64,000 nt of DNA from IMGVR_UViG_3300024262_006558:62001-126000, one strand, 5' to 3'. Counted from the stretch's first letter, positions 10,802 through 63,608 are shown. Program-made: numbers and translations. Notes: a model not told the origin generated them from the letters alone.

Positions 10802-10816
10802 AATTATTTATTATTT

Positions 10817-22095: not shown

Positions 22096-22584
22096 ATGGC
22101 AGATATGTTTAGACCAGTTCCAATTGAACAGGAACCTAAAAGAAAAAATAGGTTTGCTCTTGAATTTCCTACCGAGCTTGGTATTGATCAATTCATAGTG
22201 CAAACTTCTGGGAAACCAAAGTTAAATATTAACCCAGTGGAAATACCATATATGAATACTAGTACTTGGGTTGCTGGTAGATCTGTATGGCAATCGATTG
22301 ATGTAACATTCATCGATGTTATCGGACCCTCTACTACTCAAAAGCTTATGGAATGGATTAGACTTCATTTCGAATCAGCTACTGGTCGTATGGGATATGC
22401 TGTTGGTTACAAAAAGAACTTAGTATTAAAAGCGCTTGATCCGACTGGTATAGAGGTGGAAAAATGGACTCTTATCGGCTCAATGATTACTAATATCGAT
22501 TTTGGTGGATTTGACTACGGCGATGATGGACTTGCTGACATCACAATAAGTGTTCAAATGGACAGATGTTTATTAGCAGCTTAA
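22096..22584 (+). CDS. Tail tube protein (T4 gp19-like)
   Basis: PKRKNRF...EIPYMN...AGR..WQ.I.VTF...LDPTG..VEKWTL...D.G.FDY pattern, 162 aa. Confidence 0.85.
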   Translation: MADMFRPVPIEQEPKRKNRFALEFPTELGIDQFIVQTSGKPKLNINPVEIPYMNTSTWVAGRSVWQSIDVTFIDVIGPSTTQKLMEWIRLHFESATGRMGYAVGYKKNLVLKALDPTGIEVEKWTLIGSMITNIDFGGFDYGDDGLADITISVQMDRCLLAA

Positions 22585-24508: not shown

Positions 24509-24564
24509 GTTAATAAATAGACAAAAAAAGATTTGTAATGATCCCTTTTTAAATATTAATTACG

Positions 24565-24624
24565 ATAACAGAAAATAAAAGATAACTCTTCGAGTCGCTT
24601 AACGCTTATCTTTATTTTCGTGTT
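24565..24624 (-). repeat. Terminal hairpin site of array A, inverted copy of 60263..60322
   Basis: The reverse complement matches 60263..60322 at 59/60 nt. Confidence 0.95.
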
Positions 24625-24688
24625 GTATGCCATTAAAACGGTACGCTCGTACCTCGCCATACAACATGGTATATAAAACATACACTCA

Positions 24689-24847
24689 CTACCACTTTTC
24701 TTCTTTAAGAATTATAGGGTCAAAGGCGTAACCTAAATACGCCTTATACAGTTCAGGTCTTATCCAACCCCTATGTTTAGTTTTTAACCAAATTCCTTTT
24801 TTTATACGCCTTATTATGCGTATTTCATTCCATATACTTGTTATCAT
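24689..24847 (-). CDS. 52-aa basic, Trp-rich peptide encoded inside a hairpin loop
   Basis: Hand translation MITSIWNEIRIIRRIKKGIWLKTKHRGWIRPELYKAYLGYAFDPIILKEEKW. Flanked by arms gtatataaaacata / tacgtttcatatac. Confidence 0.6.
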   Translation of the reverse strand: MITSIWNEIRIIRRIKKGIWLKTKHRGWIRPELYKAYLGYAFDPIILKEEKW

Positions 24848-24890
24848 AATCCGTTCGTTTTACGTTTCATATACTTACCGTTGTAACACA

Positions 24891-25181
24891 TTAGCCAACT
24901 CTCGCTAAGTGCTTTCTAAAATCTTCGTTTTCCTTTTCCATAAATTCAGTAGCCTTTTGCATACATTCAATTAGGTTGTGGTTCTTGGTTTCTATTATTT
25001 CAGCAACTCCTTTCCATTGTCTTACTTCAGATGGGCTACCTTTGTCGCTTACATTTATGAAATAACCATCTTCATAGTCATACATAAAACAGATATTTCT
25101 TTCTTTTGCCAACGCTTCAAAACGTGTTACAACATTTTGTATAGTGCATGGCTTAATTTCGTTTTCTTTATTAGTGTTCAT
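24891..25181 (-). CDS. Cassette hypothetical protein (starts in loop, reads through the site)
   Basis: CTIQNVVTR is encoded by the hairpin arm and GTT. Confidence 0.65.
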   Translation of the reverse strand: MNTNKENEIKPCTIQNVVTRFEALAKERNICFMYDYEDGYFINVSDKGSPSEVRQWKGVAEIIETKNHNLIECMQKATEFMEKENEDFRKHLARVG

Positions 25182-25263
25182 CCTTATTTAAGTTTTTGGT
25201 CATTTATTTAATTAGCGGTTTCAAATCGCCACGACACCATACAAGATGCCGTTGTGTGTAATA

Positions 25264-25473
25264 CTAGCAACTACCATATCTGAAACTCCCAAATCCTTCA
25301 CCTTCGTATTCAGAATCAATAAAGAACCCTAATTTATCAAGTTCCTCAATATCATCCTTGCTCACTAATTCAGGGTCAATAGCTACATAAAAGTAGTCGT
25401 GTTCACAATGGCTTGGGTTTCTTGGGTTGCCATATTTTAAAAGTATTTGTAATGCTTTAATTAAATCTTCCAT
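25264..25473 (-). CDS. Cassette hypothetical protein
   Basis: MEDLIKALQILLKYGN...HCEHD. ATG at 25473. Confidence 0.7.
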   Translation of the reverse strand: MEDLIKALQILLKYGNPRNPSHCEHDYFYVAIDPELVSKDDIEELDKLGFFIDSEYEGEGFGSFRYGSC

Positions 25474-25612
25474 CTTTCTATTTAGTTTGTGGCTTAAATT
25501 CCGTACTACACACAACAATGTATATAGTTTATAAGCCTAATTAATATTATTTTTCAATTTGTAAATTTGTGCTATGGCTTACAAAACCATATACTCAACG
25601 TTATGCTTAACA

Positions 25613-25864
25613 CTATTGCATTAATTCTAACATAGCGTCTATACCATGTATTTGTTTAGTTGCTTTGAGTGTATCGTCTTCTTTGCTCTCTATATTTAAA
25701 GAGTAGCTTTTGCCATAACAAACTACTTTATCACTATGTATGTGGCAAAATCCAGCACTTATAGGTTCAAGGTGTTTAAAAGTCGAGTGTTCTATTGTTG
25801 TCGGGAAAATTATAATTTCGTCATATTCTCCTAATCTTACGTATTTCTGTTTTGTATCGTACAT
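25613..25864 (-). CDS. Cassette hypothetical protein
   Basis: KYV...IIIFP..IEHS...PISAGFC....CYGKSYSLNI pattern, typical of small phage proteins. Confidence 0.7.
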   Translation of the reverse strand: MYDTKQKYVRLGEYDEIIIFPTTIEHSTFKHLEPISAGFCHIHSDKVVCYGKSYSLNIESKEDDTLKATKQIHGIDAMLELMQ

Positions 25865-25960
25865 TTTCAATTTTAGTTTAGTGGTTTAACAATCCGTGAT
25901 AAGCATAACACAACCTATAAAGCCAAAAAAAAGGCTTATAGCTTTGTGCATTAGGCACAA

Positions 25961-26185
25961 TTAAGAAACGAACTCATTAAATTCATCTTCCTTAATTTCT
26001 CGTGCTTTACTATTCGTTACACCACCATACTTTTTAGATACCTTTAAAACCGCATCATCTTCATTTAATGCAAATGTGTAAGCACTCGAAGGTGTACAGT
26101 AAGGTCTTGATACCCTATAAAATTTAACTGTGCCTAACATTGTGTATAGCACATTGCTTTCGGTGTTTTTTGATACTGTATTCAT
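25961..26185 (-). CDS. Cassette hypothetical protein (reads through site)
   Basis: VLYTMLGTV is encoded by the arm and GTT. Confidence 0.6.
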   Translation of the reverse strand: MNTVSKNTESNVLYTMLGTVKFYRVSRPYCTPSSAYTFALNEDDAVLKVSKKYGGVTNSKAREIKEDEFNEFVS

Positions 26186-26257
26186 AGTTTTAAGTTTTTT
26201 ATTTTCAATTTAAGTTAGTGAGGCAACGCGCCATACACTCGTTCGTTATAGTGCATA

Positions 26258-26440
26258 TTATTGCTTTACTTCTTTACCACAATCAAAACACTCGTATTCT
26301 GTTTCGCTTATTGGTTTTTGCATACTTGGCTGCACACAATCGCAATAAAACGTACCCTTCGGCACAATAACATTATCTATATTTAATAGCTTGTTTTCTG
26401 CTTCCTTTTTACCTTCGTTGTACATTTGAAAATCATTCAT
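26258..26440 (-). CDS. Cassette Cys-rich small protein (reads through site)
   Basis: LNIDNVIVP crosses the site. Contains CxC...CxxC. Confidence 0.6.
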   Translation of the reverse strand: MNDFQMYNEGKKEAENKLLNIDNVIVPKGTFYCDCVQPSMQKPISETEYECFDCGKEVKQ

Positions 26441-26500
26441 AATTCATATTTTTAAGTTATTAATCGCTACTAAAACATAGACCTTACATTATATTTAATG

Positions 26501-26698
26501 CTACTTATGTAGTTCTAAACAACGGTATCTAAAATTATATTCATCGTACCAAAAACTTCTACAATTCCACATATTTATAGCATCCCCATAAACATTATTA
26601 TCAAACTTTAACCCTCTTTCTTCTGCTTGTTTGCAACTGTCTATCACTTTAAATCTGTGATAAAAGCATACAGTCATAAATCTTAATATTTTTTTCAT
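26501..26698 (-). CDS. Cassette hypothetical protein
   Basis: 65 aa, with NVYGDAIN..NCRS.W. Confidence 0.65.
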   Translation of the reverse strand: MKKILRFMTVCFYHRFKVIDSCKQAEERGLKFDNNVYGDAINMWNCRSFWYDEYNFRYRCLELHK

Positions 26699-26792
26699 TT
26701 TATCTATTTTGTTTTTAGTTAATTAACCGCACTAAAATATAACACGGTATAAAATGGCATTAAAACGCCATCTATACAACCGTTATATGCAA

Positions 26793-27101
26793 TTATAGTT
26801 TTAGTATTTGTTTAATGTCTGAATAACTAAACGTGCTACTTTTGAATTGATTCTTATCATTAGGGTTATACTTACCTATTTTATGACAATCTCTTTGTAT
26901 ATGATACAATAAATCACCAGTAGCGTACAGACTGCCATCTTTATTTATGCTGTAAACTACCCCTTCTTTTACCGTGTACAAATCTCTTCTTGCAACATAA
27001 TCTCTACCACAATAACACAAAGATATTTCCGCAAACAACCCACCTTCAAGCTCTCCACTTATTCTTAAATTTTCGGATAGTTCTTTTTCTATTAAATCCA
27101 T
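26793..27101 (-). CDS. Cassette hypothetical protein
   Basis: 102-aa ORF bounded by complementary ends. Confidence 0.65.
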   Translation of the reverse strand: MDLIEKELSENLRISGELEGGLFAEISLCYCGRDYVARRDLYTVKEGVVYSINKDGSLYATGDLLYHIQRDCHKIGKYNPNDKNQFKSSTFSYSDIKQILKL

Positions 27102-27256
27102 TCTATTAAGTTTATCGGTTAATAATCAACTGCATACAGCATATAGTAAACGGCAATACAAAACTTCTACTTTAACATTATGAGCAACATTTTAACCATT
27201 TCTTTATTTGTGGTTATTTATCCGTAAAATAAAACATTTTATAGCTGTACTCATTA

Positions 27257-28053: not shown

Positions 28054-28076
28054 ATATATTTGATTATTAATCTCTG

Positions 28077-30458
28077 TTAAAAATCTTCGAACGAAGCGCC
28101 AGTTGGTAAAACTTGAAAGGTCAAGTCGATGAATTCAACTGATGGAGTTGGTTGTAATTGAATCTTACCTACCAATGTGTTTCTATCAATTGTATCTGTA
28201 GAGTTCAAAGTGTCATCCATTACCACATTAAAAGCATTTAAACCTCTTTGGTTTTGGATATTCAATAATATTGGCTCCACTTTCGCTAAGAATTGATCTC
28301 TTAACGTCTGATCGTTTTGTTCGAAAAGCAATGTTAAAGATGCTGCAGCTACTAATCTTCTTACTTGAAGTAATAATCTTCTTACGTTGATTCTATCAAG
28401 TGAAGAACTTTGTCTCTGTAGTGTCTTCTGACCAAAGATAACGATACCTTGTTGAACGAAAGATGCAATTGGATTGACTCTTCCTTGGTAAAGCGTATCT
28501 CTGTTTCCAGCGTTCATTTTCACATCAACTTTGTTTACAAAGTCTCCTAACAAACCTCTGTTGATACCTGCTGGCGCGAACCATGGGTTAGCAACATTAT
28601 CTGTAAGCGCGATTGCTTGAACAGCTCCCATTGTAGGTGCTTGGTAAGTATAAACACTATTGTTAGCGTCTATAATTTGAATCCAAGGCCAATAAGTAGC
28701 AGCATAACTAGAATCAATTCCTGTTGAATCTAATATAGACACAATCTCTTCTGGAGTTCCCTTAACTTCACCAGAGGTAAGTCTTGGAGCATCCATTATG
28801 TATAAGCTATCAGCTCTATCTTCAACCATTTCAAGCGCAGAATTAATTAACTCAAAGTTATTTGAGAAATCTATACCTGGCGTTGCGAATAGGTTGATGT
28901 CAACCTCTTCTGGATTAGAAAATGTTCCAATACCTGCTTTAAATGAATTTGAGTTATCTATTTTAGATGCTGCAAATTCTTCATATTGCTCTTCATAAGA
29001 ATACAATTTATCCCATCCATCAAAACCGCCTGCTGGCACTAATGTGAATTTCAATTTATTTCTATCAATTCTAGTTCCTGCAGCATTAGTATAAGCTGAC
29101 ATTGAAATTTTATCTCCAGTAGTAAATCCTGTTGGCGCAGCGCTTTCCATATGGAAACCGTTAACAGTTGTCATTCCGCTAGAAACCCCTCCTTGATAAG
29201 AGAAAAAATCTTTCTCAAGAGTCTTGATAGAATTCTGGAAAGAAATCTCATTTTGAGTTTGAGAAGTGTATCCAAGCTCAGTAAGACCTAAATAAGATCT
29301 AAAGATTGAATCTCCTGACAAATATGTAGTTTTATAAAATAAATCTGGAGCAGTTGTTCCAGAAACTCCATTATTTCTAATGCTATATCCTCTAAAACCA
29401 CCTGGTACAGTGTTAGATGGTATATTTTGAGCCATCTCTACAGTTATGTAAGAAGATCTCCTTGGGTAATCCTCATCAGTTGTACCAATTACTCTTGCAA
29501 TGTAACCGTTTGAAGTTTCATCTAACGAAAGATTAGAGAATCTTTCAAGAGCTGTTTGGCTAGCTGTTTTGTCTGTATCATTAAAGCTTCTTACTAGAAG
29601 ATCGAATGTATAGTTGTTAATGTCAATGTTTTGAATTGATATCTTGATTTCTTCATTTGCAGAATCACCATCAGAAATTGTTCTAACCTTGAAAAGGTTT
29701 CTAACTTCATTTCCTATAACTCTAGAAACAACCCATGGAGTAACTGCGTCAGAATAACTGTCAGCATAATCTGTATAAGAAGCATCATTTGCGTATACTA
29801 AAGTAGGACTCAAATCTGACAACTCACCTCTTGCAAAAGATTCTCTCACATAATGAGGAAAAATACTTTCAACATAAAGATCAATTTCCCCTGTTATAAC
29901 ATCTGGACTTTCACCTAACGCTCTAACAATGTAATCATCTCTAGTTTCATCTAAAGATACTGTCATTCCGCTTCCAGTAATCCCTGTCATAGGACCTGTA
30001 GTTGCGCTTAATACGAATGAACTAAGAGGTGTACTACCTGTAGTTAACCCCCCTATAGTCACGTCACTTTCCTCATTGAATGAGAACTCTCCGCTAATTT
30101 GATTTGCTTTACTTCTAAGAACTGCTAATACTGATCCAGCATTAGTTGATCCTGTTCCAGCAACGATTAACCACGCTCCTGAGTTAGTAAAACCATTTTG
30201 TCCCAAAATTCTTGTGACCGTTAACTCATTGGACTGTGCCAAGAATGCGTTCGCAACATAAGGGAGTGAAAATTTAGGGTTTGTGCTTCCAAATCTTGCA
30301 AGGTACTCATCGGTACTTGCAATTTTTACTGGTTCGAAAGCAGGCCCTTTTAACGTTTTACCAACAAGACCCAATCTTGTGATACCAACTCTTGATGCAA
30401 AGATGGTAAAATCTTGTTCTCTAGTAAAAACACCTGGTGATAAGAATACTGTAGCCAT
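28077..30458 (-). CDS. Tail sheath protein (T4 gp18-like)
   Basis: SPGVFTREQD N-terminus; YAATYWPW, PWFAPAG.NRG, NPI, GQKTLQ...DRINVRRL C-terminus. Confidence 0.95.
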   Translation of the reverse strand: MATVFLSPGVFTREQDFTIFASRVGITRLGLVGKTLKGPAFEPVKIASTDEYLARFGSTNPKFSLPYVANAFLAQSNELTVTRILGQNGFTNSGAWLIVAGTGSTNAGSVLAVLRSKANQISGEFSFNEESDVTIGGLTTGSTPLSSFVLSATTGPMTGITGSGMTVSLDETRDDYIVRALGESPDVITGEIDLYVESIFPHYVRESFARGELSDLSPTLVYANDASYTDYADSYSDAVTPWVVSRVIGNEVRNLFKVRTISDGDSANEEIKISIQNIDINNYTFDLLVRSFNDTDKTASQTALERFSNLSLDETSNGYIARVIGTTDEDYPRRSSYITVEMAQNIPSNTVPGGFRGYSIRNNGVSGTTAPDLFYKTTYLSGDSIFRSYLGLTELGYTSQTQNEISFQNSIKTLEKDFFSYQGGVSSGMTTVNGFHMESAAPTGFTTGDKISMSAYTNAAGTRIDRNKLKFTLVPAGGFDGWDKLYSYEEQYEEFAASKIDNSNSFKAGIGTFSNPEEVDINLFATPGIDFSNNFELINSALEMVEDRADSLYIMDAPRLTSGEVKGTPEEIVSILDSTGIDSSYAATYWPWIQIIDANNSVYTYQAPTMGAVQAIALTDNVANPWFAPAGINRGLLGDFVNKVDVKMNAGNRDTLYQGRVNPIASFVQQGIVIFGQKTLQRQSSSLDRINVRRLLLQVRRLVAAASLTLLFEQNDQTLRDQFLAKVEPILLNIQNQRGLNAFNVVMDDTLNSTDTIDRNTLVGKIQLQPTPSVEFIDLTFQVLPTGASFEDF

Positions 30459-49229: not shown

Positions 49230-49874
49230 ATGAAAAAGCCAACTATAAACATATATTCAATAACAAGCTCTAATCAAAATTCATGTATATACATAGGAGT
49301 AACTTCTAGGAGTTTAAAAATTAGACTTTCTGAACATATTAGAAATAATACTGGAACATGTTTCAAACAATGGTTGGAGCAAGAAATTAGCCAAGGTCAT
49401 GAAATTTTTATTAACACACTAGATGTTGTATATAAAAAAGAGTCTAAATTTTGGGAAGGGTTTTGGATATGTAACTTTAAATCCTGGGGGTTTACAACCC
49501 TAAATTCAAATATTGGAGGAGGTGGCCCTCTTTATATGACTACACAACAAAAAGAGAAAATGAGTCTTTGTAAGAAGGGTGTGAAAAACCCTTTTTATAA
49601 TAAGAAGCACACAAAAATTTCTAAAGAAAAAATAAGCTGTAACAACTCCAGGTATTGGAAAGGTAGAAAATTAAGACCAGAAATGGTTAGAAAACTTTCT
49701 GAATCCAACTCTATACCAGTGGATCAATTTGATAAATTAGGGAACTTTATAAAGCATTGGAGCTCTATAACAGAGGCTTCAAACATATTGGGTATAGACT
49801 CAAGTTCAATCGTTAAAGTGTTAAAAAACAAAAGAAAAAAAGCAGGAAACTATGGATGGAAATATAAAAAATAG
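49230..49874 (+). CDS. GIY-YIG homing endonuclease with NUMOD3/NUMOD1 domains
   Basis: IYSI...IYIGVT...RL.EH, NPFYNKKHT..SKEKIS, SITEAS..LGI....I..V......AG.Y.WKY. Confidence 0.85.
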   Translation: MKKPTINIYSITSSNQNSCIYIGVTSRSLKIRLSEHIRNNTGTCFKQWLEQEISQGHEIFINTLDVVYKKESKFWEGFWICNFKSWGFTTLNSNIGGGGPLYMTTQQKEKMSLCKKGVKNPFYNKKHTKISKEKISCNNSRYWKGRKLRPEMVRKLSESNSIPVDQFDKLGNFIKHWSSITEASNILGIDSSSIVKVLKNKRKKAGNYGWKYKK

Positions 49875-54967: not shown

Positions 54968-55348
54968 GTGAAATTTATGAGAAAACTCTTCTACGTAAAT
55001 AATAGTGGATATAAAACGTCTCTTAATCAAACTCTCAGGCAAGCTGAAGAATCTGCCACAATTAATTACATAAGGGAGAAGTGCAGCGTTTTTATAGCTC
55101 AAATGATTGAATTAAATATAGAGTCGACATTTGGCCCAATGGAATTGCATAACTTTAATATAAGGTGTAGCAAATTTTTTAAGACTATTAATGTCCATGA
55201 TTTTGGTGTAGTATATGATGAGTCTATTTGGATGCCTCAAGACATACCAAGAAATATGTTAAGGGTAACAGTTCAATTAAGCAGTTATTTACATGCATAT
55301 GAGATGGACTTCTCTATATCTAATATTAAGAAAAAATACAATTTATGA
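54968..55348 (+). CDS. Hypothetical protein resembling the tail sheath C-terminal domain
   Basis: NQTLRQ...F.VVYDE......IPRNML...VQL parallels sheath GQKTLQR...FNVVMDD......IDRNTL...IQL. Confidence 0.45.
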   Translation: MKFMRKLFYVNNSGYKTSLNQTLRQAEESATINYIREKCSVFIAQMIELNIESTFGPMELHNFNIRCSKFFKTINVHDFGVVYDESIWMPQDIPRNMLRVTVQLSSYLHAYEMDFSISNIKKKYNL

Positions 55349-56277
55349 AAAGTAAAAGACCGACTAATACAATAATAGTAACTGGAGGCTCTGGGTTACT
55401 TGGAAAACATTTACGAGAAATATGGGATAATGATCACGTAATTTATATTTCATCTAAAGACTTTGATCTCACAAACGAGCAATCGGTTAGAACAATGTTT
55501 AAATTTTACCAACCAAAAGTTGTAGTTCATCTAGCGGCTCAAGTTGGAGGTATTATGGATAATTCTAAACATCCAGTTAAATACCTTAACAATAACATAA
55601 AGATGGATGCTAATGTGTTAAAGTGGGCTGAAGATTTCGGAGTCGAAAAAGTAATAGGCATGCTTAGTACATGTATATATCCTGATAATCTAAATGAAGA
55701 TCAATATCCTATGAAAGAGGAAGTGCTTCATGATGGACCTCCAGCTATAACAAATTTCTCATACGGATACGCCAAGCGATGCATGGCAGTTCAAATGGAG
55801 GCGTACAATAAAGAGTTTGGAACCAATTTTCAATGGATTGCTCCATGCAATCTTTATGGGGAGCATGATAATTTTGATCACGAACAAAAAGCTCACTTTA
55901 TTACAGCTTTAATCAAAAAGATTGATACTGCAGTAAAAAATGGAGATGATAATATTCAACTGTTCGGAACTGGGTCTCCATTGCGTCAATTTATGCATGC
56001 TGGAGATTTAGCTAAAATTATCATAGATTGTGTCGAAAATGATTATAATTTAAATATGAATGTTGCAGTCCCTTGGAATTACTCAATTAAGGATATGGCT
56101 GAAATAGCTCTTAAAGCTTGCGGGGCTGAGCATCTAAAGATAGAATTTGACCCATCTAAGCCAGATGGTCAATATAGAAAAGATGCATCAACTGAAAGGT
56201 TTAAAAAAACCTTCCCCGACTTTCAGTTTACCTCACTTGAAGAAGGTATAAAAAAGGTTTATCAAGCATTGCAATAA
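55345..56277 (+). CDS. fcl: GDP-L-fucose synthase / ColC-type epimerase-reductase
   Basis: TGGSGLLG, HLAA.VGGI, STCIYP, YGYAKR, PCNLYG, GTG.PLRQF, KPDG. Confidence 0.9.
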   Translation: MKSKRPTNTIIVTGGSGLLGKHLREIWDNDHVIYISSKDFDLTNEQSVRTMFKFYQPKVVVHLAAQVGGIMDNSKHPVKYLNNNIKMDANVLKWAEDFGVEKVIGMLSTCIYPDNLNEDQYPMKEEVLHDGPPAITNFSYGYAKRCMAVQMEAYNKEFGTNFQWIAPCNLYGEHDNFDHEQKAHFITALIKKIDTAVKNGDDNIQLFGTGSPLRQFMHAGDLAKIIIDCVENDYNLNMNVAVPWNYSIKDMAEIALKACGAEHLKIEFDPSKPDGQYRKDASTERFKKTFPDFQFTSLEEGIKKVYQALQ

Positions 56278-56389
56278 AGTTTAGATATTCATAAAGATGA
56301 TCCTGCTATAGTTTGACAGGTATTGCATTTTAAACTCAAAAATGATACCTTTACCTTTTGACTCTGAATAATAACTTTAATATATCTAT

Positions 56390-56701
56390 ATGAAGCTTAT
56401 AAATCTAAAACAAGTATCTGATCATAAAGTTAACAAATGGCTTGAGGATAATATAGCTGAACTAACCGCATACCAAAAAGAGCGCATTAGAAATGATGAG
56501 ATGGTAAGATGGGCTCCTTTTAAATTCTATGAACGTAGGAAGAAGGTTGACAGTATATGGATTAGGATATCTGCTTTGTTTATACCTTTAGCGTGGACCG
56601 TGCTAGTTATTGGGCTGCCTTTCGACTTTCTCATTACTGGAACTTGGGGATATAATAAGATAGACTGGTTTAGCAACTGGAGCAGCGCTTGTGGGTTTTA
56701 A
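56390..56701 (+). CDS. Hypothetical membrane protein at the head of array B
   Basis: 103 aa with a hydrophobic segment; the stop codon overlaps the first site. Confidence 0.65.
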   Translation: MKLINLKQVSDHKVNKWLEDNIAELTAYQKERIRNDEMVRWAPFKFYERRKKVDSIWIRISALFIPLAWTVLVIGLPFDFLITGTWGYNKIDWFSNWSSACGF

Positions 56702-56738
56702 TGTTAAGTATATGAGTAGGATTTTAAACGATTAAGTA

Positions 56739-56876
56739 ATGAGCAGTAAAAAGCACGATAAATTAAACAACGCAGAAGTTATAAAGGTGTTAGAAGAAAT
56801 AACAACGGAAGAGAAGTTAGCAATGTTTGGAATAACTAAACCAAGTACAGATGATAAAGATAAGCCGAAAAAGTAA
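56739..56876 (+). CDS. 45-aa peptide inside a hairpin loop
   Basis: MSSKKHDKLNNAEVIKVLEEITTEEKLAMFGITKPSTDDKDKPKK, between arms 56708-56729 and 56877-56898. Confidence 0.5.
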   Translation: MSSKKHDKLNNAEVIKVLEEITTEEKLAMFGITKPSTDDKDKPKK

Positions 56877-57051
56877 GTTTAAAATATTACGCATATACCT
56901 TGTTGTGAAGCGTTTTATGGGCGAGATGTTTACTTTTGAGTGCCACCATAAAAAATGCGATGGTAGGTGCTCTTACTTAGGTGATGATAGGCAGACAGGA
57001 GTTTGGATTAGCTTATATGAATGCAATAAGTGCGGAACTGAATGGATGTAA
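56851..57051 (+). CDS. Cassette Cys-rich protein (reads through site)
   Basis: ILRIYLVVKR is encoded by the arm and GTT; C-terminal CxxC. Confidence 0.55.
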   Translation: MIKISRKSKFKILRIYLVVKRFMGEMFTFECHHKKCDGRCSYLGDDRQTGVWISLYECNKCGTEWM

Positions 57052-57073
57052 TGCTTTACAATAATATATATAT

Positions 57074-57382
57074 ATGACATTTGAAGAAATAGAAACAAAC
57101 CCTGATCTTTCAAACAATTCAGAGCAGGAATATGTTAGACTTAAAAAAAGAAACGTAATGATCAGAAAGTCATTCTACCATAGCTACAATAAATCGGTCT
57201 GCGAGTATGATGTAAACGGTCATCCTACCAAATGCGAATGTGGATGCGAGGATTTCGATCAAGATATCATAGAAATGGTCGAAGGTCATATTCATGAATA
57301 TGACCTTACATGCTCAAATGAAGGCTGTAGAAAAATAGTTGGATACTGGTCTTATGGATCTTGGCAGTCTTTAGAATTGTAA
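57074..57382 (+). CDS. Hypothetical Zn-binding protein
   Basis: CECG...C...C...GYWSYG.W. Confidence 0.65.
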   Translation: MTFEEIETNPDLSNNSEQEYVRLKKRNVMIRKSFYHSYNKSVCEYDVNGHPTKCECGCEDFDQDIIEMVEGHIHEYDLTCSNEGCRKIVGYWSYGSWQSLEL

Positions 57383-57395
57383 TAAAACACATATA

Positions 57396-57635
57396 ATGAA
57401 AAAATTTATAGACATAGAATTGCCTAAAAATTTTATGAACGTATCTATTACCGATAACAACGAATTAGTAGCGGATAACAATAGTAGTTCGGAATGGGAT
57501 ACTTTAAAATTCCCATTGCCAAAAAGGGTGTGGGGAGTGTATAGCTATGAAGCTACCGTAGATAATCAAAACGCTAAATCTATTGCTAGACTAGTTGATT
57601 GTCGAGGTTGGATAAGAAGGTTCTTAGAGGTTTAA
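57396..57635 (+). CDS. Hypothetical protein
   Basis: 79-aa ORF. Confidence 0.6.
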   Translation: MKKFIDIELPKNFMNVSITDNNELVADNNSSSEWDTLKFPLPKRVWGVYSYEATVDNQNAKSIARLVDCRGWIRRFLEV

Positions 57636-57645
57636 TTATAGAATT

Positions 57646-57825
57646 ATGGATATAAAAGAAATAAAAAAAGAAGAGGTAAGTGAAATATATGACTTTTTAG
57701 AGGGGCTGCAAGATTACGGACACATTTACCACTACCCGCCCGAAAATCTTGACGAACCTTTCAAAAAGATAATGGAAGGAATTGAAGAGGTGCAGGGATT
57801 GATGAAAGATAGCTTTGGGATGTAA
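57646..57825 (+). CDS. 59-aa hypothetical protein
   Basis: Hand translation MDIKEIKKEEVSEIYDFLEG...KDSFGM. Confidence 0.55.
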   Translation: MDIKEIKKEEVSEIYDFLEGLQDYGHIYHYPPENLDEPFKKIMEGIEEVQGLMKDSFGM

Positions 57826-58183
57826 TCTTATTTACATGCTGTTAATAAAACTAGGGCAACGTTTAACGTTTTCTAGTAGATTATAATATGCACTCTACCA
57901 TGTGCCCGACATCGGCAACATGGTTTTATGTTGAATTAAATAGGGGTGGGATTAAATGAACGTCTGCACTAGTCGAGTTGAAAATATACTTGCAAGTTGG
58001 TACTAAAGCCAACTATCCTAGCCAACGGGCTTTGCGGTTCACCCTATTTAATGTAACGCTTTGTGTATGGTTAGTAAACCCTTGCACAGACTTTCAAAAT
58101 TAGTATAAACCTTGGTGGGTTTATTACCTACAATGTTAAATGTATGCTTTGCTAGAGATTACGGACAGATAACCACTAAAACA

Positions 58184-58489
58184 ATGGACTTAAAAAAGAG
58201 AATAGAAGAAATTACACAAAACGGAACGCTTGAAAGCGGTGAACAAATAACCTATGTAGATACCGATGACCTTTACTTGTTGCTGAATGAAGTAAACTCT
58301 AGTGAAGTCATACATCTTGTTAGCGATTGGAATGATTGGGTATATGGATCACCTACATCAATAATAGATGGGAGTCATATTGAAGTTATGTGGTCTGACA
58401 ACTCAGTCACTAAAGTTTTTTATGAATGGAGAAGTAAATCTATGGCACATAAGTTACCACCAATAAAGTGGAGGTATTCTAATAGCTAA
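58184..58489 (+). CDS. Cassette hypothetical protein (first 45 codons lie within the hairpin)
   Basis: MDLKKRIEE...SSEVIHLVSDW. GTT at 58319; the TAA overlaps the closing TAAC. Confidence 0.65.
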   Translation: MDLKKRIEEITQNGTLESGEQITYVDTDDLYLLLNEVNSSEVIHLVSDWNDWVYGSPTSIIDGSHIEVMWSDNSVTKVFYEWRSKSMAHKLPPIKWRYSNS

Positions 58490-58581
58490 CGGTTTGGCTA
58501 TGTGCTGAACGTAGAGCAACGGAGTTTTGCATATAGCTAGTGTTATATGCTTTTAATTATTAACAACTAAAGATTATAAAA

Positions 58582-58932
58582 ATGAGTGAAACAGTACATT
58601 ACAGAGGGATTGCTACTAAAATTGAGCAACCAAACGACAAGACATTAATTGATGTCGCAAAAAGTATTTTAACAGAACGTAACAAAGAAATAGCCGACTA
58701 TTATGACAATGTAATAGAGTGTTTGTGTGATAGCTATTATAGAGAATTTTTCTACCATTCAAAAACACAGACCCTTTACAAATTAGACAATAATGAATAC
58801 GAGCCTGATGAAGATATAATAAGAGCAGAACCGAAAGAAAACGGGACTATTGAATATGAGTTAAGATATTATAACGGTGGTGCTGGATTTGATGAATGTA
58901 TGGAAGAGGCTTTTGATAAGCTCGATGCTTAA
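58582..58932 (+). CDS. Cassette hypothetical protein
   Basis: MSETVHYRG...YYNGGAGFDE; bounded by gttatatgc/gcatataac. Confidence 0.75.
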   Translation: MSETVHYRGIATKIEQPNDKTLIDVAKSILTERNKEIADYYDNVIECLCDSYYREFFYHSKTQTLYKLDNNEYEPDEDIIRAEPKENGTIEYELRYYNGGAGFDECMEEAFDKLDA

Positions 58933-59036
58933 TTGCATATAACGGCATCCTGTATGATGTCGTGAAACGAAGTGGAATGCATTCATACACCGTGTTGTGT
59001 GTAGTGCGGATTATTAACTGATAACAAAATTAAAAG

Positions 59037-59216
59037 ATGAATGTATTTGATGAATTTTTAATGGAATCTGAAAAGGAACAATTAAAAGACAACCGACTGA
59101 AAGAACAGAAAGATAAAAAAGACTACTCGTATGAACACGATGGTAGAATAGAAACATGTGACGATTGTAGAACACCTATAAACTCACACGGACACTGCCC
59201 TAGATGCGATTACTAG
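59037..59216 (+). CDS. 59-aa cassette protein with CxxC...CxxC zinc finger
   Basis: Hand translation ends TCDDCRTPINSHGHCPRCDY. Confidence 0.65.
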   Translation: MNVFDEFLMESEKEQLKDNRLKEQKDKKDYSYEHDGRIETCDDCRTPINSHGHCPRCDY

Positions 59217-59267
59217 CATTACACACAACGGATGGTAATATGAATAGTGCGGATTAAAAACATAAAA

Positions 59268-59435
59268 ATGGCAAAGACACGAGAACAAAAAAGAATTGAA
59301 AGTGCGGATAAAGTTTGTAGAGAACTTAGATACCAAATAGTTAAATATGGATTGATAGGTGATTGGGACGCATTAAATAAGCACTTTAATTCTTGGATGA
59401 ATAACGCTAAGAAATCTAAATACGACAGACCCTAG
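59268..59435 (+). CDS. 55-aa protein inside a hairpin loop
   Basis: MAKTREQKR..., between arms gtaatatgaatagtgc and gcattatttatattac. Confidence 0.6.
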   Translation: MAKTREQKRIESADKVCRELRYQIVKYGLIGDWDALNKHFNSWMNNAKKSKYDRP

Positions 59436-59514
59436 CATTATTTATATTACGTGTTGTGCGCACGTTTTAATTGCGACACAACGCTAAGTATAACAAACGG
59501 AAAATTTACGACTT

Positions 59515-59673
59515 ATGAGATTTGAATTAATGCAATGGAAATGGTATAGGAAGTGGAAAGGTGGCTCTTATTACCTTATATGGAATTGGCTACCTATGAA
59601 CACTTTTTGGAGCGACAAACTTATTACAAGCTGTGGAGGCAGAGCCATTAAAGAGGAACACTACCCTAAGTAA
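59515..59673 (+). CDS. 52-aa Trp-rich peptide inside a hairpin loop
   Basis: MRFELMQWKWYRKWKGGSYYLIWNWLPMNTFWSDKLITSCGGRAIKEEHYPK. Confidence 0.6.
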   Translation: MRFELMQWKWYRKWKGGSYYLIWNWLPMNTFWSDKLITSCGGRAIKEEHYPK

Positions 59674-59791
59674 ATTTTATGTTTTGTTATACAATGTTGT
59701 ATGGCAAAGCGTACCGTTTTAATGGCATACAACGGTTGAGTATAAACGTAGTGTTTAACTGAACTTAATTTGAAACACAAAACTTAAAATT

Positions 59792-59992
59792 ATGATAAAA
59801 AGATTGATTGAAAAACTGAAAACATTACGTTTATACTTTGTTAGAAAACGTTGTTTTGAGGTGTATTTCACAGATACCAAAAGTGGAAAGGAAGGAAGAA
59901 TTAATTTATGGGTGAAAGATGTCGATGAAGTAGAACCTTACTTTGAAAAACACTTTCCACATTTGGAATTATATGATATAGGAGAATGTTGA
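59792..59992 (+). CDS. Cassette hypothetical protein (reads through site)
   Basis: TLRLYFVRKR is encoded by the arm and the GTT at 59840. Confidence 0.65.
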   Translation: MIKRLIEKLKTLRLYFVRKRCFEVYFTDTKSGKEGRINLWVKDVDEVEPYFEKHFPHLELYDIGEC

Positions 59993-60102
59993 TTACAATG
60001 TTTTCTAACGACCTGTGTAAAATTTCGTGTGAGGCACGAGCAATGAATTTTAAACCTTGTTAGCGTTTCGTTTTTGAGCGTTGGCATTTAAAAACTAAAA
60101 AG

Positions 60103-60264
60103 ATGAAAGTAAGTATTCAGTTCACAAAAGAAGAATTAAGATTATTAAAAAAGGCGTTATTTTTTGGAATAACACATAATGAAAACAACCAAGAAGCAAA
60201 TAAAATGAATGAATTAGATGCGAAAATGAATTTACTGTGTGCGTTGGCAGAAAATGAACGCTAA
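60103..60264 (+). CDS. 53-aa cassette protein
   Basis: MKVSIQFTKEELRLLKKALFFG...; the TAA overlaps the TAAC of the terminal site. Confidence 0.6.
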   Translation: MKVSIQFTKEELRLLKKALFFGITHNENNQEANKMNELDAKMNLLCALAENER

Positions 60265-60322
60265 CACGAAAATAAAGATAAGCGTTAAGCGACTCAAAGA
60301 GTTATCTTTTATTTTCTGTTAT
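60263..60322 (+). repeat. Terminal hairpin site of array B, inverted copy of 24565..24624
   Basis: aacacgaaaataaagataagcgttaagcgactcaaagagttatcttttattttctgttat. Confidence 0.95.
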
Positions 60323-60394
60323 AACGCGCTTTTAGCTACATAATTTTTATTGATTATATTCAAAAATTTGTTTATGTTTTGAATAAAATCATAA

Positions 60395-61594
60395 ATGACG
60401 GAAGTAAAGATACCCTTAGTAAAAGACACTATATCACATGAGGATATGGATGCTCTTGCGGATTGGATTAAAACCTACCCTCGCCTTACGAAAGGCCCAG
60501 AAACAAATGAATTTGAAAAAGAGTGGTCTGAATGGCTAGGTACAAAGTATTCCGTATTTTGTAACTCTGGATCTTCAGCAAACCTTCTTATGCTTTACGC
60601 TCTTATCGTAGCGAAAAGACTTAACAATAAAAAAATAGTGGTACCAGCATTAGCTTGGGCTACGGATCTTGCTCCAGTAATGCAATTGGGTCTTGAGCCA
60701 ATTATATGCGATTGTAATGGTCAAAATCTCGCTGTAGACCTAAATGATTTAGAACGTATTTTCCAGAAAGACAACCCTTCAGCCCTTATGCTGGTATCGG
60801 TTCTTGGTATCCCTCCAAATATGGATGAGATAATTGTTCTTTGTAAAAAGTATGGAGTTATCCTTTTAGAGGATGCTTGTGAATCACTAGGTTCTGAATA
60901 CAAAGGCAATAAACTCGGAACTTTCGGATCCATGTCAACATTCTCACTATATTTCGGACACCATCTTTCAACTATTGAAGGTGGTATGGTATGCACTGAT
61001 GATGAAGAGCTTTATGAAATATTGAAATCTATTCGTTCTCATGGTTGGGACAGAGATGCTTCAGAAGAGTATCGTAAAAAGTGGAGAGATAAATGGGATG
61101 TGGATGATTTTAACGGCCTTTACACTTTCTACCACCCTGGATTCAATTTAAGAGCTACAGATTTACAAGCATTTATAGGTAGAAGGCAAATTAAAAAAGC
61201 TGATGAAGTTTCTAAAATCAGAGCTGCTAATTTTCAGAAATATCAAGAATTGATATCCGATCATTCTGCATGGAAACCTGAACCGCCAGAAGGCGCTTTT
61301 GTTTCCAATTTTTGTTACCCTGTACTGCACGCAAAGAGAAAAGAGATAGTAACAGATCTAATCGCTAATGGCGTTGAAACTAGACCTATGATATGTGGAT
61401 CTATGAGTACTCAACCATTTTATGTGGACAAATACGGCAGAAAAGAATTATACACCGCAAAGCAAATAGATGATTACGGATTCTACGTGCCTAATAATGA
61501 TAAAATGACTGATGAGGACATTCAAACCGTATGCAACATAATCAATAAGCATACTGTAAACCCTGAAGTAGAACCGCAAGAAAACAATCAATAA
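60395..61594 (+). CDS. DegT/DnrJ-fold PLP enzyme, ColD-like GDP-4-keto-6-deoxymannose 3-dehydratase
   Basis: [29 protein letters not shown] (His at the usual Lys position), RSHGW. Confidence 0.8.
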
Positions 61595-61595
61595 A

Positions 61596-63608
61596 ATGAA
61601 AGAAGATAAAAAGAAAGCTCTCATTATAGGTATCACTGGAATGGATGGGTCTCACTTGTCTGAATTACTTTTAGATAAAGGATATGAAGTTCACGGGGTT
61701 ATTAGAAGACATTCTCATATAGGGGGAACTGGACGAATTGATCACATATTCGATGAATTGAAACTTCATTATGGAGACGTTACTGACGCTTTAAATATAT
61801 CTAGGTTAATTTCCGAAATACAACCCGATGAAATTTACAACCTATCAGCTCAGAGCCATGTAAAAGTTTCTTTTGAAGAACCTGGATATACAGCTCAAGT
61901 AGATGCAATTGGAACATTAAACGTAATGGAATCAGCTAGAATCCATTGTCCTAATGCGAAGATTTACCAAGCATCAACCTCTGAGATGTTTGGAGGTTTA
62001 GCTTACAATAGACCTGAAAATGGTTATACTGAAGAATCTCCATTTCACCCGCGATCACCTTATGGTGTCGCTAAGGTGTACGGTTTTTGGATAGTAAAAA
62101 ACTATAGAGAAGCATACAATATGCATGCTTCCAACGGTATATTATTCAATCATGAAGGTGAAAGACGTGGAGTAACTTTTGTTACTAGAAAAGTGACCAG
62201 AGCATTGGCGGCCATTAAGAAGGGTGAGCAAGATGTTTTGACTCTCGGTAACATGGATTCCTTAAGAGACTGGGGATATGCTAAAGAGTATTGTATAAAT
62301 TTAGATGTACCTATTTTGACAACTAGTGGATGGAAATTTTATGATGAAATTTCTGAAGGTGATCAAATAATTAATTTTAATTCTGAAGAAAATCACATAA
62401 CTACAGATACAGTTAAAAGCAAAATAGTAATTAAATCAAATGGTGAAAAAATTAAATTAACAGGCAGAGGAGTTTGTATAAACGTAACTCCAGATCATCG
62501 GATTTACTATCAGAAAAAAAGTAAAAAATCAAAAGGTGGATGGTCAAAATACAAAATTTGTACAGCTAAAGAATTTTATGATTTATTAAAAAATAAAGCG
62601 TACAGAACAAAGTATGACTATAGGCTGCCGCATTTTCAAGATTATGACAAAAAAGAAAATGAAAAATACTCAGATAACGAACTTTATTTAATAGGGGCTT
62701 TATTGGCGGAAGGTTGTCTATCTAATTCAAATCCTGGGAGAGGGTCTATAGTTTCCTTATCTCAATCTTTTATTAAAAATGAAAAAATTCACAAAAAATT
62801 ACAAAAAATAATAGATGATGAAAAACTTGAAGCTAGGTTATGCAATAAAAACAATGGTGTAACTGAATGGGTCTTTACAGCAGATAGTTCTAAAAAAATT
62901 ATTGAATATTTTGATGGATTTGATGTGCATGTGATGCCTAAAGATTTCTATAATTTAAGCAGTAGGCAATGTAAAATTGTATTTGACTCTTTAATGGATT
63001 GCGATGGATGTTGGGGATCATACACATACACTTCTAAACGTAATTTACTAGCATCTGATTTCCAAACTATAGCTCATCTTGCAGGATATAGAACTACGGG
63101 CGTAAAATTTGTAAATAACGTTTACATAACTAGTGTTATAACACGATCCAAAAAACATATGTATATACAAAATGTGGAATCATATAATGATAACAATGAT
63201 AAAGTTTGGTGTGTGAATAGCAATAATGGAACTATCATAACTAGAGATCAAAACTGCATTAATATAGTAGGTAATTGTGAAGGAATGTGGAGAATGTTGC
63301 AACAAGACACTCCTGATGACTATGTACTGGCAACTAACGAAACTCATACAGTAAGACAATTTGTAGAAGAAGCAGTTAGGTATTGCGGATGGGATATCGA
63401 GTGGAGAGGTGAGGGCGTAGATGAAAAAGGTTATGATAAGTCAACTGGTAAACTTCTCATCGAAATTAACCCTAAATATTATAGACCATCTGAAGTTGAT
63501 CTATTGTTAGGGGACGCTACCAAAGCAAAGGAGAAGATGGGTTGGGAACCTAAAACTAAATTTAAAGATCTAGTCAAATTAATGATGGAGCATGATCTGA
63601 AAGCTTAA
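61596..63608 (+). CDS. gmd: GDP-mannose 4,6-dehydratase interrupted by an intein
   Basis: GITG.DGS.L, AQSHV..SF, QASTSE, PRSPYG.AK, LFNHE..RRG.TFVTRK, RDWG.A; resumes after the insert with WRMLQQD.PDDYV. Confidence 0.95.
62292..63275 (+). mobile_element. Intein with LAGLIDADG homing endonuclease (328 aa)
   Basis: Starts [12 protein letters not shown]; block B VTPDH; LIGALLAEG and FDSLMDCDG; ends VWCV...NG....R.....IVGN followed by Cys+1. Confidence 0.92.

What the first reader, a model, noticed from the sequence alone, without database searches (positions are those of the whole stretch)
56277..60395. Array B interrupts a sugar-nucleotide gene run, and no recombinase is adjacent to either array
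Seen: fcl-like and colD-like/gmd genes, which act in one pathway, are separated by the 4-kb array. Array A lies between the tube and sheath genes. Neither flank shows tyrosine-recombinase (R..HxxR..Y) or HUH motifs that I could recognise. Inference: the arrays are secondary insertions serviced in trans by a phage enzyme encoded elsewhere or by a host enzyme (CALIN-like).
Basis: partly seen in the sequence, partly recalled or inferred. Interest (0 to 1): 0.6.

Follow-up and report, generated by a model that had tools for sequence, protein, structure and literature searches.

The report
Orphan integron-like cassette arrays in phage
A 388-kb phage carries several arrays of tiny genes separated by integron-type hairpin sites but has no recombinase of its own, while related giant phages and likely host bacteria encode a small Xer-like recombinase right beside the same kind of array, which points to a phage-borne gene-capture system.

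Summary
Window 56278-60394 is 4.1 kb of 13 small co-oriented ORFs, wedged between an fcl-like gene and a ColD-like/GMD pair. In 11 other viral contigs these genes lie 20-40 nt apart. The ORFs are separated by attC-like imperfect palindromes: R''..AAC, spacer, L'', loop, L', spacer, GTT..R'. The same site family forms array A beside the sheath gene and further arrays at 241-249 kb of the 388.6-kb record.

The units behave as cassettes. In 15 of 15 single-cassette cases the R'' at a cassette's 3' end complements the R' at its own 5' end, not its hairpin partner. Homology between copies breaks at AAC|. Array B equals array A's end plus two cassettes inserted exactly after AAC.

The record encodes no tyrosine, serine or HUH recombinase. 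However, a 266-276 aa Xer/IntI-like recombinase sits just downstream of co-oriented arrays in 29 of 54 viral loci, including complete jumbo phages, behind a conserved attI-like junction. Flavobacteriales genomes hold homologues beside arrays of the same sites, with ORFs on the opposite strand.

Verdict: orphan (CALIN-like) arrays of a phage integron-like system. Recombination itself is inferred, not shown.

The parts
55345..56277 (+). fcl-like NAD-dependent epimerase/reductase gene, the left flank of array B. Its last about 15 nt plus the following 12 nt resemble a degenerate R''-spacer-L'' half site (read by eye, an inference).
   Evidence: PF01370 8.5e-47. Its homologue directly abuts colD in 11 viral contigs.
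56278..60394 (+). Array B: 13 small co-oriented ORFs separated by attC-like sites or short-form junctions.

ORFs: 56390-56701, 56739-56876, 56917-57051, 57074-57382, 57396-57635, 57646-57825, 58112-58489, 58582-58932, 59037-59216, 59247-59435, 59515-59673, 59792-59992, 60103-60264.
   Evidence: No Pfam family matches. Three ORFs match PHROGs of unknown function.
56695..56908 (+). Split site B1. The left arm (degenerate R'' plus L'') and the right arm (L' plus R' GTTGTG) enclose a 147-nt insert that holds a 45-codon ORF.
   Evidence: Inverted repeat I1, 22 nt, 86% complementary.
58045..58125 (+). Weak, degenerate long-form site at the end of a 286-nt non-coding stretch (57826-58111).
   Evidence: R1 27 bits, E 8e-4.
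58478..58553 (+). Long-form site B6. R'' ends in AAC at 58488-58490 and R' begins with GTT at 58542. It is nearly identical to a site at genome 242237-242312, with a different R'' and upstream ORF.
   Evidence: R1 55.6 bits. 97% identity over 68 nt, starting at AAC. This block is 5-40 times deeper than the neighbouring cassettes in four metagenome runs.
58931..59005 (+). Long-form site B7. Its R'' complements the R' of B6, which lies at the 5' end of the same cassette. Its own R' complements the R'' at 59216-59229, at the 3' end of the next cassette.
   Evidence: R1 67 bits. Inverted repeat I15. Pair table.
59216..59262 (+). Short-form junction B8: R''..AAC, spacer and an L''-like box, followed directly by the conserved leader motif. 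No loop, L' or R' is present.
   Evidence: Read from the sequence. Direct repeat D10.
59440..59482 (+). B9: L' and R' followed by a short hairpin that ends in a new R''..AAC. This is an ORF-less mini-cassette.
   Evidence: Direct repeat D1.
59686..59760 (+). B10: an R'-loop-R'' hairpin (ORF-less mini-cassette) ending in AAC at 59731-59733, then a short-form junction. The same hairpin in array A is followed directly by the terminal site.
   Evidence: nhmmer 1.1e-6 to window 24621-24682. Joint 59730->60263 with 3 shared letters. 96% identity over 110 nt to LR756500.1, starting right after AAC.
59997..60070 (+). Long-form site B11, 98.6% identical over 73 nt to a site in Maribacter phage Panino that has different flanking ORFs.
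   Evidence: R1 68.1 bits..
60253..60330 (+). Terminal site: AAC, a 13-bp terminator-like hairpin with a T run, then GTTAT. It is present at the end of every array in the record (five copies in the self-comparison: arrays A and B and genome about 240259, 241325 and 249091).
   Evidence: 93-98% identical copies whose homology starts at AAC and stops after GTTAT.
60395..63608 (+). Right flank: the ColD-like aminotransferase (60395-61594) and GDP-mannose 4,6-dehydratase (61596-63608).
   Evidence: PF01041 8.4e-71 and PF16363 3.5e-128.
24556..27250 (-). Array A: 8-9 small ORFs with the same site family. Long-form sites lie at 26732-26794 and 25505-25612, and the terminal site at about 24556-24634.
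   Evidence: R1 47 and 32.6 bits. Sequence. Absent from relatives L031 and L058. Identical in L052.
28077..30458 (-). Tail sheath gene, flanking array A.
   Evidence: phrog_23 9.3e-69.
22096..22584 (+). Tail-tube-like gene on the other side of array A.
   Evidence: phrog_4542 4.2e-24.

Best explanation
Array B, like array A and the arrays at 241-249 kb of the record, is an orphan cassette array of an integron-like gene-capture system that circulates among phages of Bacteroidota.

The unit. Each unit is a cassette. It runs from just after an AAC to the next AAC. It holds an attC-like site (spacer, L'', variable loop, L', spacer, R'), a short conserved leader, one small ORF, and an R'' ending in AAC that usually overlaps the stop codon.

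The proposed mechanism (inferred). A circularised cassette would join its R'' to its own site. That gives a hairpin with a perfect R stem. A small Xer/IntI-like tyrosine recombinase would cut and join at AAC|. It would insert the cassette into another site or into an attI-like site next to its own gene.

This phage. It has the cassettes but neither the recombinase nor the attI-like site. Its arrays were therefore either laid down when an enzyme was supplied in trans by a co-infecting phage or the host, or inherited from an ancestor that had one. They now sit as insertions inside the fcl-colD gene run and beside the sheath gene.

Shown: the site architecture and its covariation, the cassette-wise complementarity, the break points at AAC, the insertion status of the arrays, and the co-distribution with the recombinase family.

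Inferred: the circular intermediate, which strand folds, the enzyme-site pairing, and any present-day activity.
For: 1. Site family. 85 sites were aligned. AAC and GTT are invariant. The L stem is 96% paired, and 6 of its 7 pairs show compensatory changes. 0 of 500 shuffles reach the observed covariation.

2. Cassette-wise complementarity. In 15 of 15 single-cassette intervals (560 bp or less) the downstream R'' matches the upstream R' at 7-8 of 9 positions. The R'' and R' of one hairpin match at 3.4 of 9, which is the level of random pairs (3.7).

3. Break points. 20 of 58 inter-array HSPs begin at AAC[GA] in both partners. About 0.7% would be expected by chance. ORF homology ends at AACG|.

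4. Empty versus filled. Array A has hairpin-AAC followed directly by the terminal site. Array B has 532 nt (two cassettes, ending in AAC) between the same two elements.

5. Site blocks 95-99% identical occur in the unrelated phages Panino and LR756500 beside different ORFs. In seawater runs they are far deeper than their neighbouring cassettes.

6. Insertion status is shown by relatives that lack the arrays.

7. Recombinase. Copies of 266-276 aa, with the Arg, His-x-x-Arg, His and Tyr motifs visible, lie next to arrays in L111 and L071 and are 71% identical to each other. 62 co-oriented sites lie almost all upstream of the gene in 29 of 54 loci.

8. attI-like junction. In 18 of 18 aligned loci a variable R''..TAAC is joined to a conserved TATTATATATA about 60 nt before the start codon.

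9. Three recombinase-bearing records are jumbo myophages 98-100% complete by CheckV's estimate. Each has one array, upstream of the gene.

10. Flavobacteriales. 26 of 151 genomes have sites. In G144, G013 and G049 the arrays abut a recombinase of about 270-290 aa (the G144 copy is 43% identical to the phage enzyme).
Against: - No recombination event was observed. A second sample holds array A at 99.97% identity with no rearrangement.
- The recombinase lacks the IntI-specific insertion that binds the extrahelical bases of a folded attC. The chemistry may therefore be Xer-like on double-stranded half sites rather than integron-like on hairpins.
- Many junctions are short forms without a hairpin.
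- Identical site blocks sit beside different downstream ORFs, and some break points fall 10-28 nt after R' or inside the loop. Homologous or illegitimate recombination therefore also shapes the arrays.
- Two ORFs sit inside hairpin loops (B1, and the B8/B9 pair). Simple integron logic does not predict this.
- Only 29 of 54 recombinase loci show sites, partly because many contigs are cut just upstream of the gene.
- The A5 alignment was fitted to the model, which favours the counted structure.
Confidence: 0.68

Rival explanations
1. PeSL-like regulatory cassettes. On this reading the repeats are composite terminator/promoter or RNA-processing stem-loops between small genes. Shuffling would be by the phage's homologous recombination between these about 70-100-nt repeats, as in the hyperplastic regions of T4-type phages. 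No site-specific enzyme would be needed.
For: - The arrays are co-oriented with the flanking operons.
- Each site is followed by a conserved leader and sits just upstream of a start codon.
- The terminal site is a terminator-like hairpin with a T run.
- The phage has no recombinase.
- Some homology break points lie inside or after the sites.
- G-U pairs are common in the L stem on the sense strand.
- PeSL precedent: PMC2839356, PMC4122927.
Against: - Break points concentrate on a 3-4-nt core (AAC), which is too short for homologous exchange.
- The outer stem pairs across the cassette rather than within the local hairpin. A terminator or processing hairpin does not predict this.
- A dedicated recombinase and a fixed junction sequence accompany the arrays in other phages and in bacteria.
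- No sigma-70-type or Bacteroidota-type promoter motif was recognised in the leader. This was by eye only and was not tested.
Confidence: 0.17
2. Xer-type modules on double-stranded simple sites, by analogy with the pdif modules of Acinetobacter plasmids. On this reading the functional site is the R''-spacer-L'' pair of inverted boxes: a 7-5/6-7 core-type site cut within the spacer. The long hairpin form is merely two such sites in inverted orientation.
For: - The enzyme is closest to XerA (4A8E, 142 bits) and lacks the IntI insertion.
- Short-form junctions holding only R''-spacer-L'' are frequent, especially in recombinase-bearing phages.
- The four boxes are related in sequence.
- The crossover maps beside the spacer.
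Against: - Strong covariation of L'' with L', and of a cassette's R'' with its own R', argues for selection on base pairing. That implies a folded form.
- Inverted simple sites would give inversion rather than excision.
Confidence: 0.12
3. Miniature transposable elements. On this reading each ORF is flanked by 9-14-bp terminal inverted repeats and mobilised by a transposase, of DDE or IS200/IS605 (PATE-like) type.
For: Each cassette has inverted repeats at its two ends (inverted repeat I15).
Against: - The repeats differ between cassettes but stay complementary. This is covariation, not a conserved transposase-binding sequence.
- No Y1/HUH transposase is found in the record.
- No target-site duplication is present beyond the shared AAC.
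- The enzyme that co-distributes with the arrays is a tyrosine recombinase.
Confidence: 0.03

Closest known systems
Integron attC sites and CALINs (clusters of attC sites lacking an integron-integrase), including the CALINs reported in virulent phages (Qi et al. 2023, PMC9892861; IntegronFinder 2.0, PMC9024848)
   Same: - The R''-L''-loop-L'-R' architecture, with AAC...GTT cores and an asymmetric unpaired spacer.
- Arrays of single-gene cassettes.
- Each cassette's two ends are complementary, so the hairpin that stands in the array is chimeric.
- The crossover maps to one core box.
- No integrase is nearby.
- Sites of the same model occur in arrays in Flavobacteriales genomes in the classical ORF-then-site polarity, with GTTRRRY / RYYYAAC boxes.
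   Different: - In phages the ORFs lie on the other strand relative to the site (48 of 50 segments against 0 of 13 in bacteria). The site therefore precedes the gene and carries a conserved leader.
- The phage boxes read RYRYAAC / GTTRYRY.
- Many junctions are short forms.
- Every array ends in a fixed terminator-like site.
- There are several arrays, with 13-14 long-form sites in one phage, against 2-4 sites per published phage CALIN.
- Whether the curated attC model recognises these sites was not testable here.
Integron integrase IntI (TIGR02249; VchIntIA, PDB 2A3V)
   Same: The array-associated enzyme is a tyrosine recombinase of the Xer/IntI branch (TIGR02249 145-158 bits). Its gene lies at the end of the array next to an attI-like junction. 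Read in the conventional site orientation, the gene is divergent from the array, as in classical integrons.
   Different: It is 266-276 aa. It scores below the family cut-off (265 bits). It aligns to IntI in two pieces that skip the IntI-specific insertion. It is closest to archaeal XerA. It is absent from the window's genome.
PeSLs (promoter-early stem-loops) of T4-type phages (PMC2839356, PMC4122927)
   Same: Short conserved stem-loop-containing repeats flank small ORFan genes in hypervariable regions of large myophages. They mark the points where genes are gained, lost and swapped.
   Different: PeSL exchange is by homologous recombination within the repeat. Here the break points fall on a 3-nt core, the cassette ends covary, and a site-specific recombinase co-distributes with the arrays.
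pdif modules / Xer-dependent mobile modules
   Same: A Xer-type enzyme is implicated. Modules are bounded by short inverted-box sites in alternating orientation, and no cognate enzyme need be encoded in the carrier.
   Different: The sites are not dif-like 11-6-11 sequences. The arrays are of single small genes. Covariation points to a hairpin structure.

Membership tests
integron attC site | Outer inverted core boxes R'' (..AAC) and R' (GTT..). | tested here: met
   AAC and GTT are invariant in 85 of 85 aligned sites.
integron attC site | Inner boxes L''/L' that pair, an unpaired central spacer, and a variable terminal loop. | tested here: met
   The L stem is 96.3% paired and 6 of 7 pairs show compensatory change. 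The spacers are about 5-6 nt against 3 nt. The matched sites span 63-145 nt, because the loop varies in length. The alignment was fitted to the model.
integron attC site | Consensus RYYYAAC / GTTRRRY. | tested here: inconclusive
   The phage boxes are mostly RYRYAAC / GTTRYRY. The bacterial sites found with the same model fit the classical consensus.
integron attC site | The cassette boundary lies inside one core box, so a cassette's two ends are complementary and the hairpins in the array are chimeric. | tested here: met
   15 of 15 single-cassette pairs. Break points at AAC|.
integron attC site | The ORF lies upstream of its attC on the top strand (the usual cassette polarity). | tested here: not met
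   In phage arrays 48 of 50 ORFs are on the model's strand, so the site precedes the gene. In bacterial arrays the count is 0 of 13.
integron attC site | Recognised by the curated attC covariance model (IntegronFinder/HattCI) and recombined by IntI. | not testable with these tools
   Rfam holds no attC model and gives no hit in the window.
complete integron | An IntI gene with the IntI-specific insertion, next to attI and the array. | tested here: not met
   No PF00589 match in the record. No attI-like motif in the record. The enzyme in related phages lacks the insertion.
CALIN | Two or more attC sites clustered, with no integron-integrase nearby. | tested here: met
   4-5 long-form sites within 4.1 kb in array B, and no recombinase in 388.6 kb. 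This holds only if the sites are accepted as attC-like.
PeSL | A composite early-promoter plus stem-loop repeat in a T4-type phage, with exchange by homologous recombination inside the repeat. | tested here: not met
   Break points fall on a 3-4-nt core. Promoter activity was not tested.
IS200/IS605-derived palindromic elements | Mobilised by a Y1 HUH transposase (TnpA), with subterminal hairpins at both ends. | tested here: not met
   No PF01797 match. There is one hairpin per unit.

The most novel reading that the evidence does not exclude
Jumbo and other phages of Bacteroidota run their own integron-like gene-capture system. Its parts would be a small Xer-type recombinase without the IntI insertion, a fixed attI-like junction, and attC-like cassettes whose genes face the opposite way from bacterial cassettes and carry their own leader. 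The site family is shared with integron-like arrays in Flavobacteriales hosts, and cassettes pass between unrelated phages. The window's phage would be a carrier of orphan arrays that depend on an enzyme supplied in trans.
Probability: 0.55. Interest if true: 0.9.

Novelty: new variant of a known kind. Interest (0 to 1): 0.74.

Why it matters
Integrons are regarded as bacterial devices, and complete integrons have been reported as nearly absent from Bacteroidetes (PMC9024848). The published phage cases are a few small CALINs and captured bacterial integrons (PMC9892861).

Here the same logic appears as a phage-native system:
- long arrays of ORFan genes in complete jumbo-phage genomes;
- a dedicated minimal recombinase;
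- an inverted gene polarity;
- near-identical sites in unrelated phages and in seawater metagenomes.

If this is real, it gives a concrete mechanism for how large phages acquire and swap the small accessory genes that fill their hypervariable regions. It also defines a recombinase that works without the IntI-specific domain. That would make directly testable how attC-type sites are recognised and how integrase and Xer chemistry are related. Finally, it offers a way to find phage accessory genes by their flanking sites.

For this window in particular, it explains why a 4-kb block of tiny genes splits a sugar-nucleotide pathway operon.

Tried and rejected
- Rfam at gathering thresholds and a tRNA scan of the window found nothing.
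- Tandem Repeats Finder does not see the arrays, because the units are not tandem copies.
- A crude regular-expression scan for AAC...GTT palindromes was unspecific, with 98 mostly chance hits. It was replaced by a covariance model.
The work was redone by coordinates.
- A 15-nt exact pattern in viral contigs returned mostly chance matches. Only 13 of the 80 fetched loci held model-confirmed sites.
- HUH/Y1 and serine recombinases are absent.
- There is no synteny between recombinase-bearing phages and this phage around the arrays, so no trace of a lost recombinase gene.
- The closest fcl relatives could not be found beyond a near-identical contig that ends inside array B. The uninterrupted junction was therefore shown in more distant sugar clusters.
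- The relatives' sheath-tube gaps hold ordinary larger genes, not arrays.
- Bacterial genomes fetched by recombinase peptide patterns had no sites. Sites were found only by scanning Flavobacteriales genomes with the model.
- The large protein searches, structure prediction and complex prediction were not used. The family scans and context sufficed.

Full report
**The observation.**
The window is bases 62001-126000 of a 388,594-bp virus record.

- The fcl-like epimerase (55345-56277), the ColD-like aminotransferase (60395-61594) and GDP-mannose 4,6-dehydratase (61596-63608) are confirmed by Pfam.
- Between fcl and colD lie 4,117 bases with 13 small ORFs, all on the + strand.
- None has a Pfam family. 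Three match PHROGs of unknown function.
- Array A (about 24556-27250, - strand) has the same build. It lies between the tail sheath (28077-30458) and a tail-tube-like gene (22096-22584).
- Further arrays lie outside the window at 241.4-243.8 and 247.7-249.2 kb of the record.

**The repeated site.**
Most ORFs are followed by an imperfect palindrome of 63-145 nt. Its parts, in order, are:

- an outer box ending in AAC, which often overlaps the stop codon (R'');
- a spacer of 5-6 nt;
- an inner box (L'');
- a variable loop;
- the complementary inner box (L');
- a spacer of about 3 nt;
- an outer box beginning with GTT (R');
- a conserved leader, and about 20 nt later the next start codon.

A covariance model built from 12 copies finds 13 sites at E<0.01 in the whole record. 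All are in the arrays. In the window nothing outside arrays A and B scores above 27 bits.

On 85 sites from this and other phages:

- AAC and GTT are invariant;
- the L stem is 96% paired;
- 6 of its 7 pairs show compensatory changes;
- no shuffle out of 500 reaches the observed covariation.

That alignment was fitted to the model, which favours the structure counted.

Three other junction types occur:

- Some junctions are short forms, with R'', the spacer and an L''-like box followed directly by the leader.
- Some are ORF-less mini-cassettes.
- Every array ends in a nearly identical terminator-like site bounded by AAC and GTTAT.

**The units behave as cassettes.** There are five lines of evidence.

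1. Complementary ends.
   - In all 15 cases where two long-form sites flank a single cassette, the R'' at the cassette's 3' end matches the R' at its own 5' end. The match is 7-8 of 9 positions outside the core.
   - The R'' and R' of one and the same hairpin match no better than random pairs (3.4 against 3.7 of 9).
   - The hairpins as they stand in the genome are therefore chimeric. A perfect outer stem would form only in a circularised cassette. This is the classical signature of integron cassettes.
2. Break points.
   - 20 of 58 local alignments between arrays begin at AAC[GA] in both partners. About 0.7% would do so by chance.
   - Homology of ORFs ends at AACG|.
3. Empty versus filled.
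   - Array A has a hairpin ending in AAC followed directly by the terminal site.
   - Array B has the same hairpin, then 532 nt (two cassettes, ending in AAC), then the same terminal site.
   - This shows up as joint 59730->60263 with three shared letters.
4. Shared site blocks.
   - Blocks 95-99% identical occur in Maribacter phage Panino and in a 462-kb uncultured phage, beside different genes.
   - In the source run and three marine runs these blocks are several-fold to 40-fold deeper than the cassettes next to them. Contigs break at them.
5. Relatives without arrays.
   - The closest diverged relatives have the sheath gene followed after 233 bp by the p120 homologue.
   - The sheath-tube gap varies from 0.2 to 5.2 kb in 25 relatives and holds no such sites.
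   - fcl abuts colD (20-40 nt) in 11 other viral contigs.

The arrays are therefore secondary insertions.

**The enzyme.**

In this record:

- It encodes no tyrosine recombinase, Y1/HUH transposase or serine recombinase.
- It has no remnant of the enzyme described below.
- It has no copy of that enzyme's junction motif.
- Closure of the genome is not shown, because there is no terminal repeat.

In other phages:

- Two other site-bearing contigs encode a 266-276-aa tyrosine recombinase within 1-2 kb of the array. The two copies are 71% identical to each other, and the catalytic Arg, His-x-x-Arg, His and Tyr motifs are visible.
- It belongs to the Xer/IntI branch but lies below both curated cut-offs. 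It aligns to IntI in two pieces that skip the IntI-specific insertion. It is closest to archaeal XerA among solved structures.
- 54 viral loci encode relatives. 29 of them hold 62 model hits, all on the recombinase strand and nearly all upstream of the gene. The control loci fetched with other proteins gave one hit.
- In 18 of 18 aligned loci a variable R''..TAAC is joined to a conserved TATTATATATA about 60 nt before the start codon. This is an attI-like junction, and its break is again at AAC|.
- Three such records are jumbo myophages of 310-465 kb, 98-100% complete by CheckV's estimate. One has direct terminal repeats. Each has a tail sheath gene and a single long array upstream of the recombinase.

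**Hosts.**

- The model finds sites in 26 of 151 Flavobacteriales genomes.
- In three of the five genomes checked, arrays of up to ten sites abut a recombinase of about 270-290 aa. The G144 copy is 43% identical to the phage enzyme, and all three likewise lack the insertion.
- There the boxes fit the classical GTTRRRY / RYYYAAC consensus, and cassette ends are again complementary.
- The genes lie on the opposite strand from the site model in 13 of 13 intervals. In phages they lie on the same strand in 48 of 50.
- Phage cassettes thus carry their gene in the reverse polarity. The site precedes the gene and supplies its leader.

**Interpretation.**
Array B is best read as an orphan, CALIN-like array of an integron-like system native to phages of Bacteroidota.

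- CALINs of 2-4 sites in virulent phages, including a Polaribacter phage, have been published and shown to be substrates of IntI1 (PMC9892861). The concept is therefore known.
- What I did not find in the literature searched is a phage-encoded minimal recombinase with its own junction site, the inverted cassette polarity, or the scale.
- Complete integrons are reported as nearly absent from Bacteroidetes (PMC9024848).

**Limits.**

- No recombination was observed.
- A second sample carries array A unchanged at 99.97% identity.
- The lack of the IntI insertion and the frequent short forms leave open a Xer-like mechanism on double-stranded half sites.
- Break points after R' and inside loops show that homologous or illegitimate exchange also acts, as in the PeSLs of T4-type phages (PMC2839356, PMC4122927).
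- The enzyme-site pairing rests on co-distribution only.

Noticed in passing
window 61596-63608: The GDP-mannose 4,6-dehydratase is 670 aa because of an in-frame insert of about 327 aa (residues about 234-560). In every other viral homologue compared, the two flanking parts are contiguous. Pfam gives only a weak intein-splicing hit (E 0.007-0.06, below the cut-off), so it is possibly an intein.
   Followed up: partly
window 49230-49874: A GIY-YIG / NUMOD homing-endonuclease-like gene lies directly upstream of the glycosyltransferase run, overlapping the start of the first glycosyltransferase gene.
   Followed up: no
L004 about 3350-11200 (genome 241.35-249.2 kb): A second repeat family of about 45 nt (GTACATA.., a C-run, ..CCGTATATATTGGTGA) stands before at least eight genes or arrays in this region. 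It is sometimes followed by a hairpin. It looks like a phage promoter motif.
   Followed up: no
window 57826-58111: A 286-nt non-coding stretch inside array B, not matched by Rfam. It ends in a degenerate site. Parts of it recur in seawater contigs.
   Followed up: partly
window 23411-28077 and loci L031-L058: The interval between the sheath gene and the p120/tube module is a hot spot in this phage family. It ranges from 0.2 to 5.2 kb in 25 relatives and is filled with ordinary larger genes in the relatives examined. The orientation of p120 varies.
   Followed up: partly
window 2164-3292, 6077-6608, 9733-10179: Tandem repeats of 372 and 207 nt (76-79% matches) lie inside very large - strand ORFs. 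They are probably repeated domains of fibre-like structural proteins.
   Followed up: no
L258 (G144:C14:68001-82000), L256, L257, L259: Flavobacteriales chromosomes carry arrays of up to ten attC-like sites next to a recombinase of about 270-290 aa that lacks the IntI insertion. Standard integron definitions, which require the IntI-specific domain, would call these CALINs.
   Followed up: partly
L005 2200-3400 (Maribacter phage Panino, PP540027.1 about 42.0-43.2 kb): A cultured 77-kb phage has a small array of the same cassettes between genes annotated as virion structural proteins. A tyrosine recombinase hit (50 bits) lies 29 kb away. Whether it belongs to the array-associated family was not checked.
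   Followed up: no
L052 and L245 (IMGVR_UViG_3300009149_000028): A 66-kb contig from another sample is 99.97% identical over 22.4 kb that include array A. It ends about 790 bp into array B. This is consistent with assemblies breaking at the repeated sites.
   Followed up: yes
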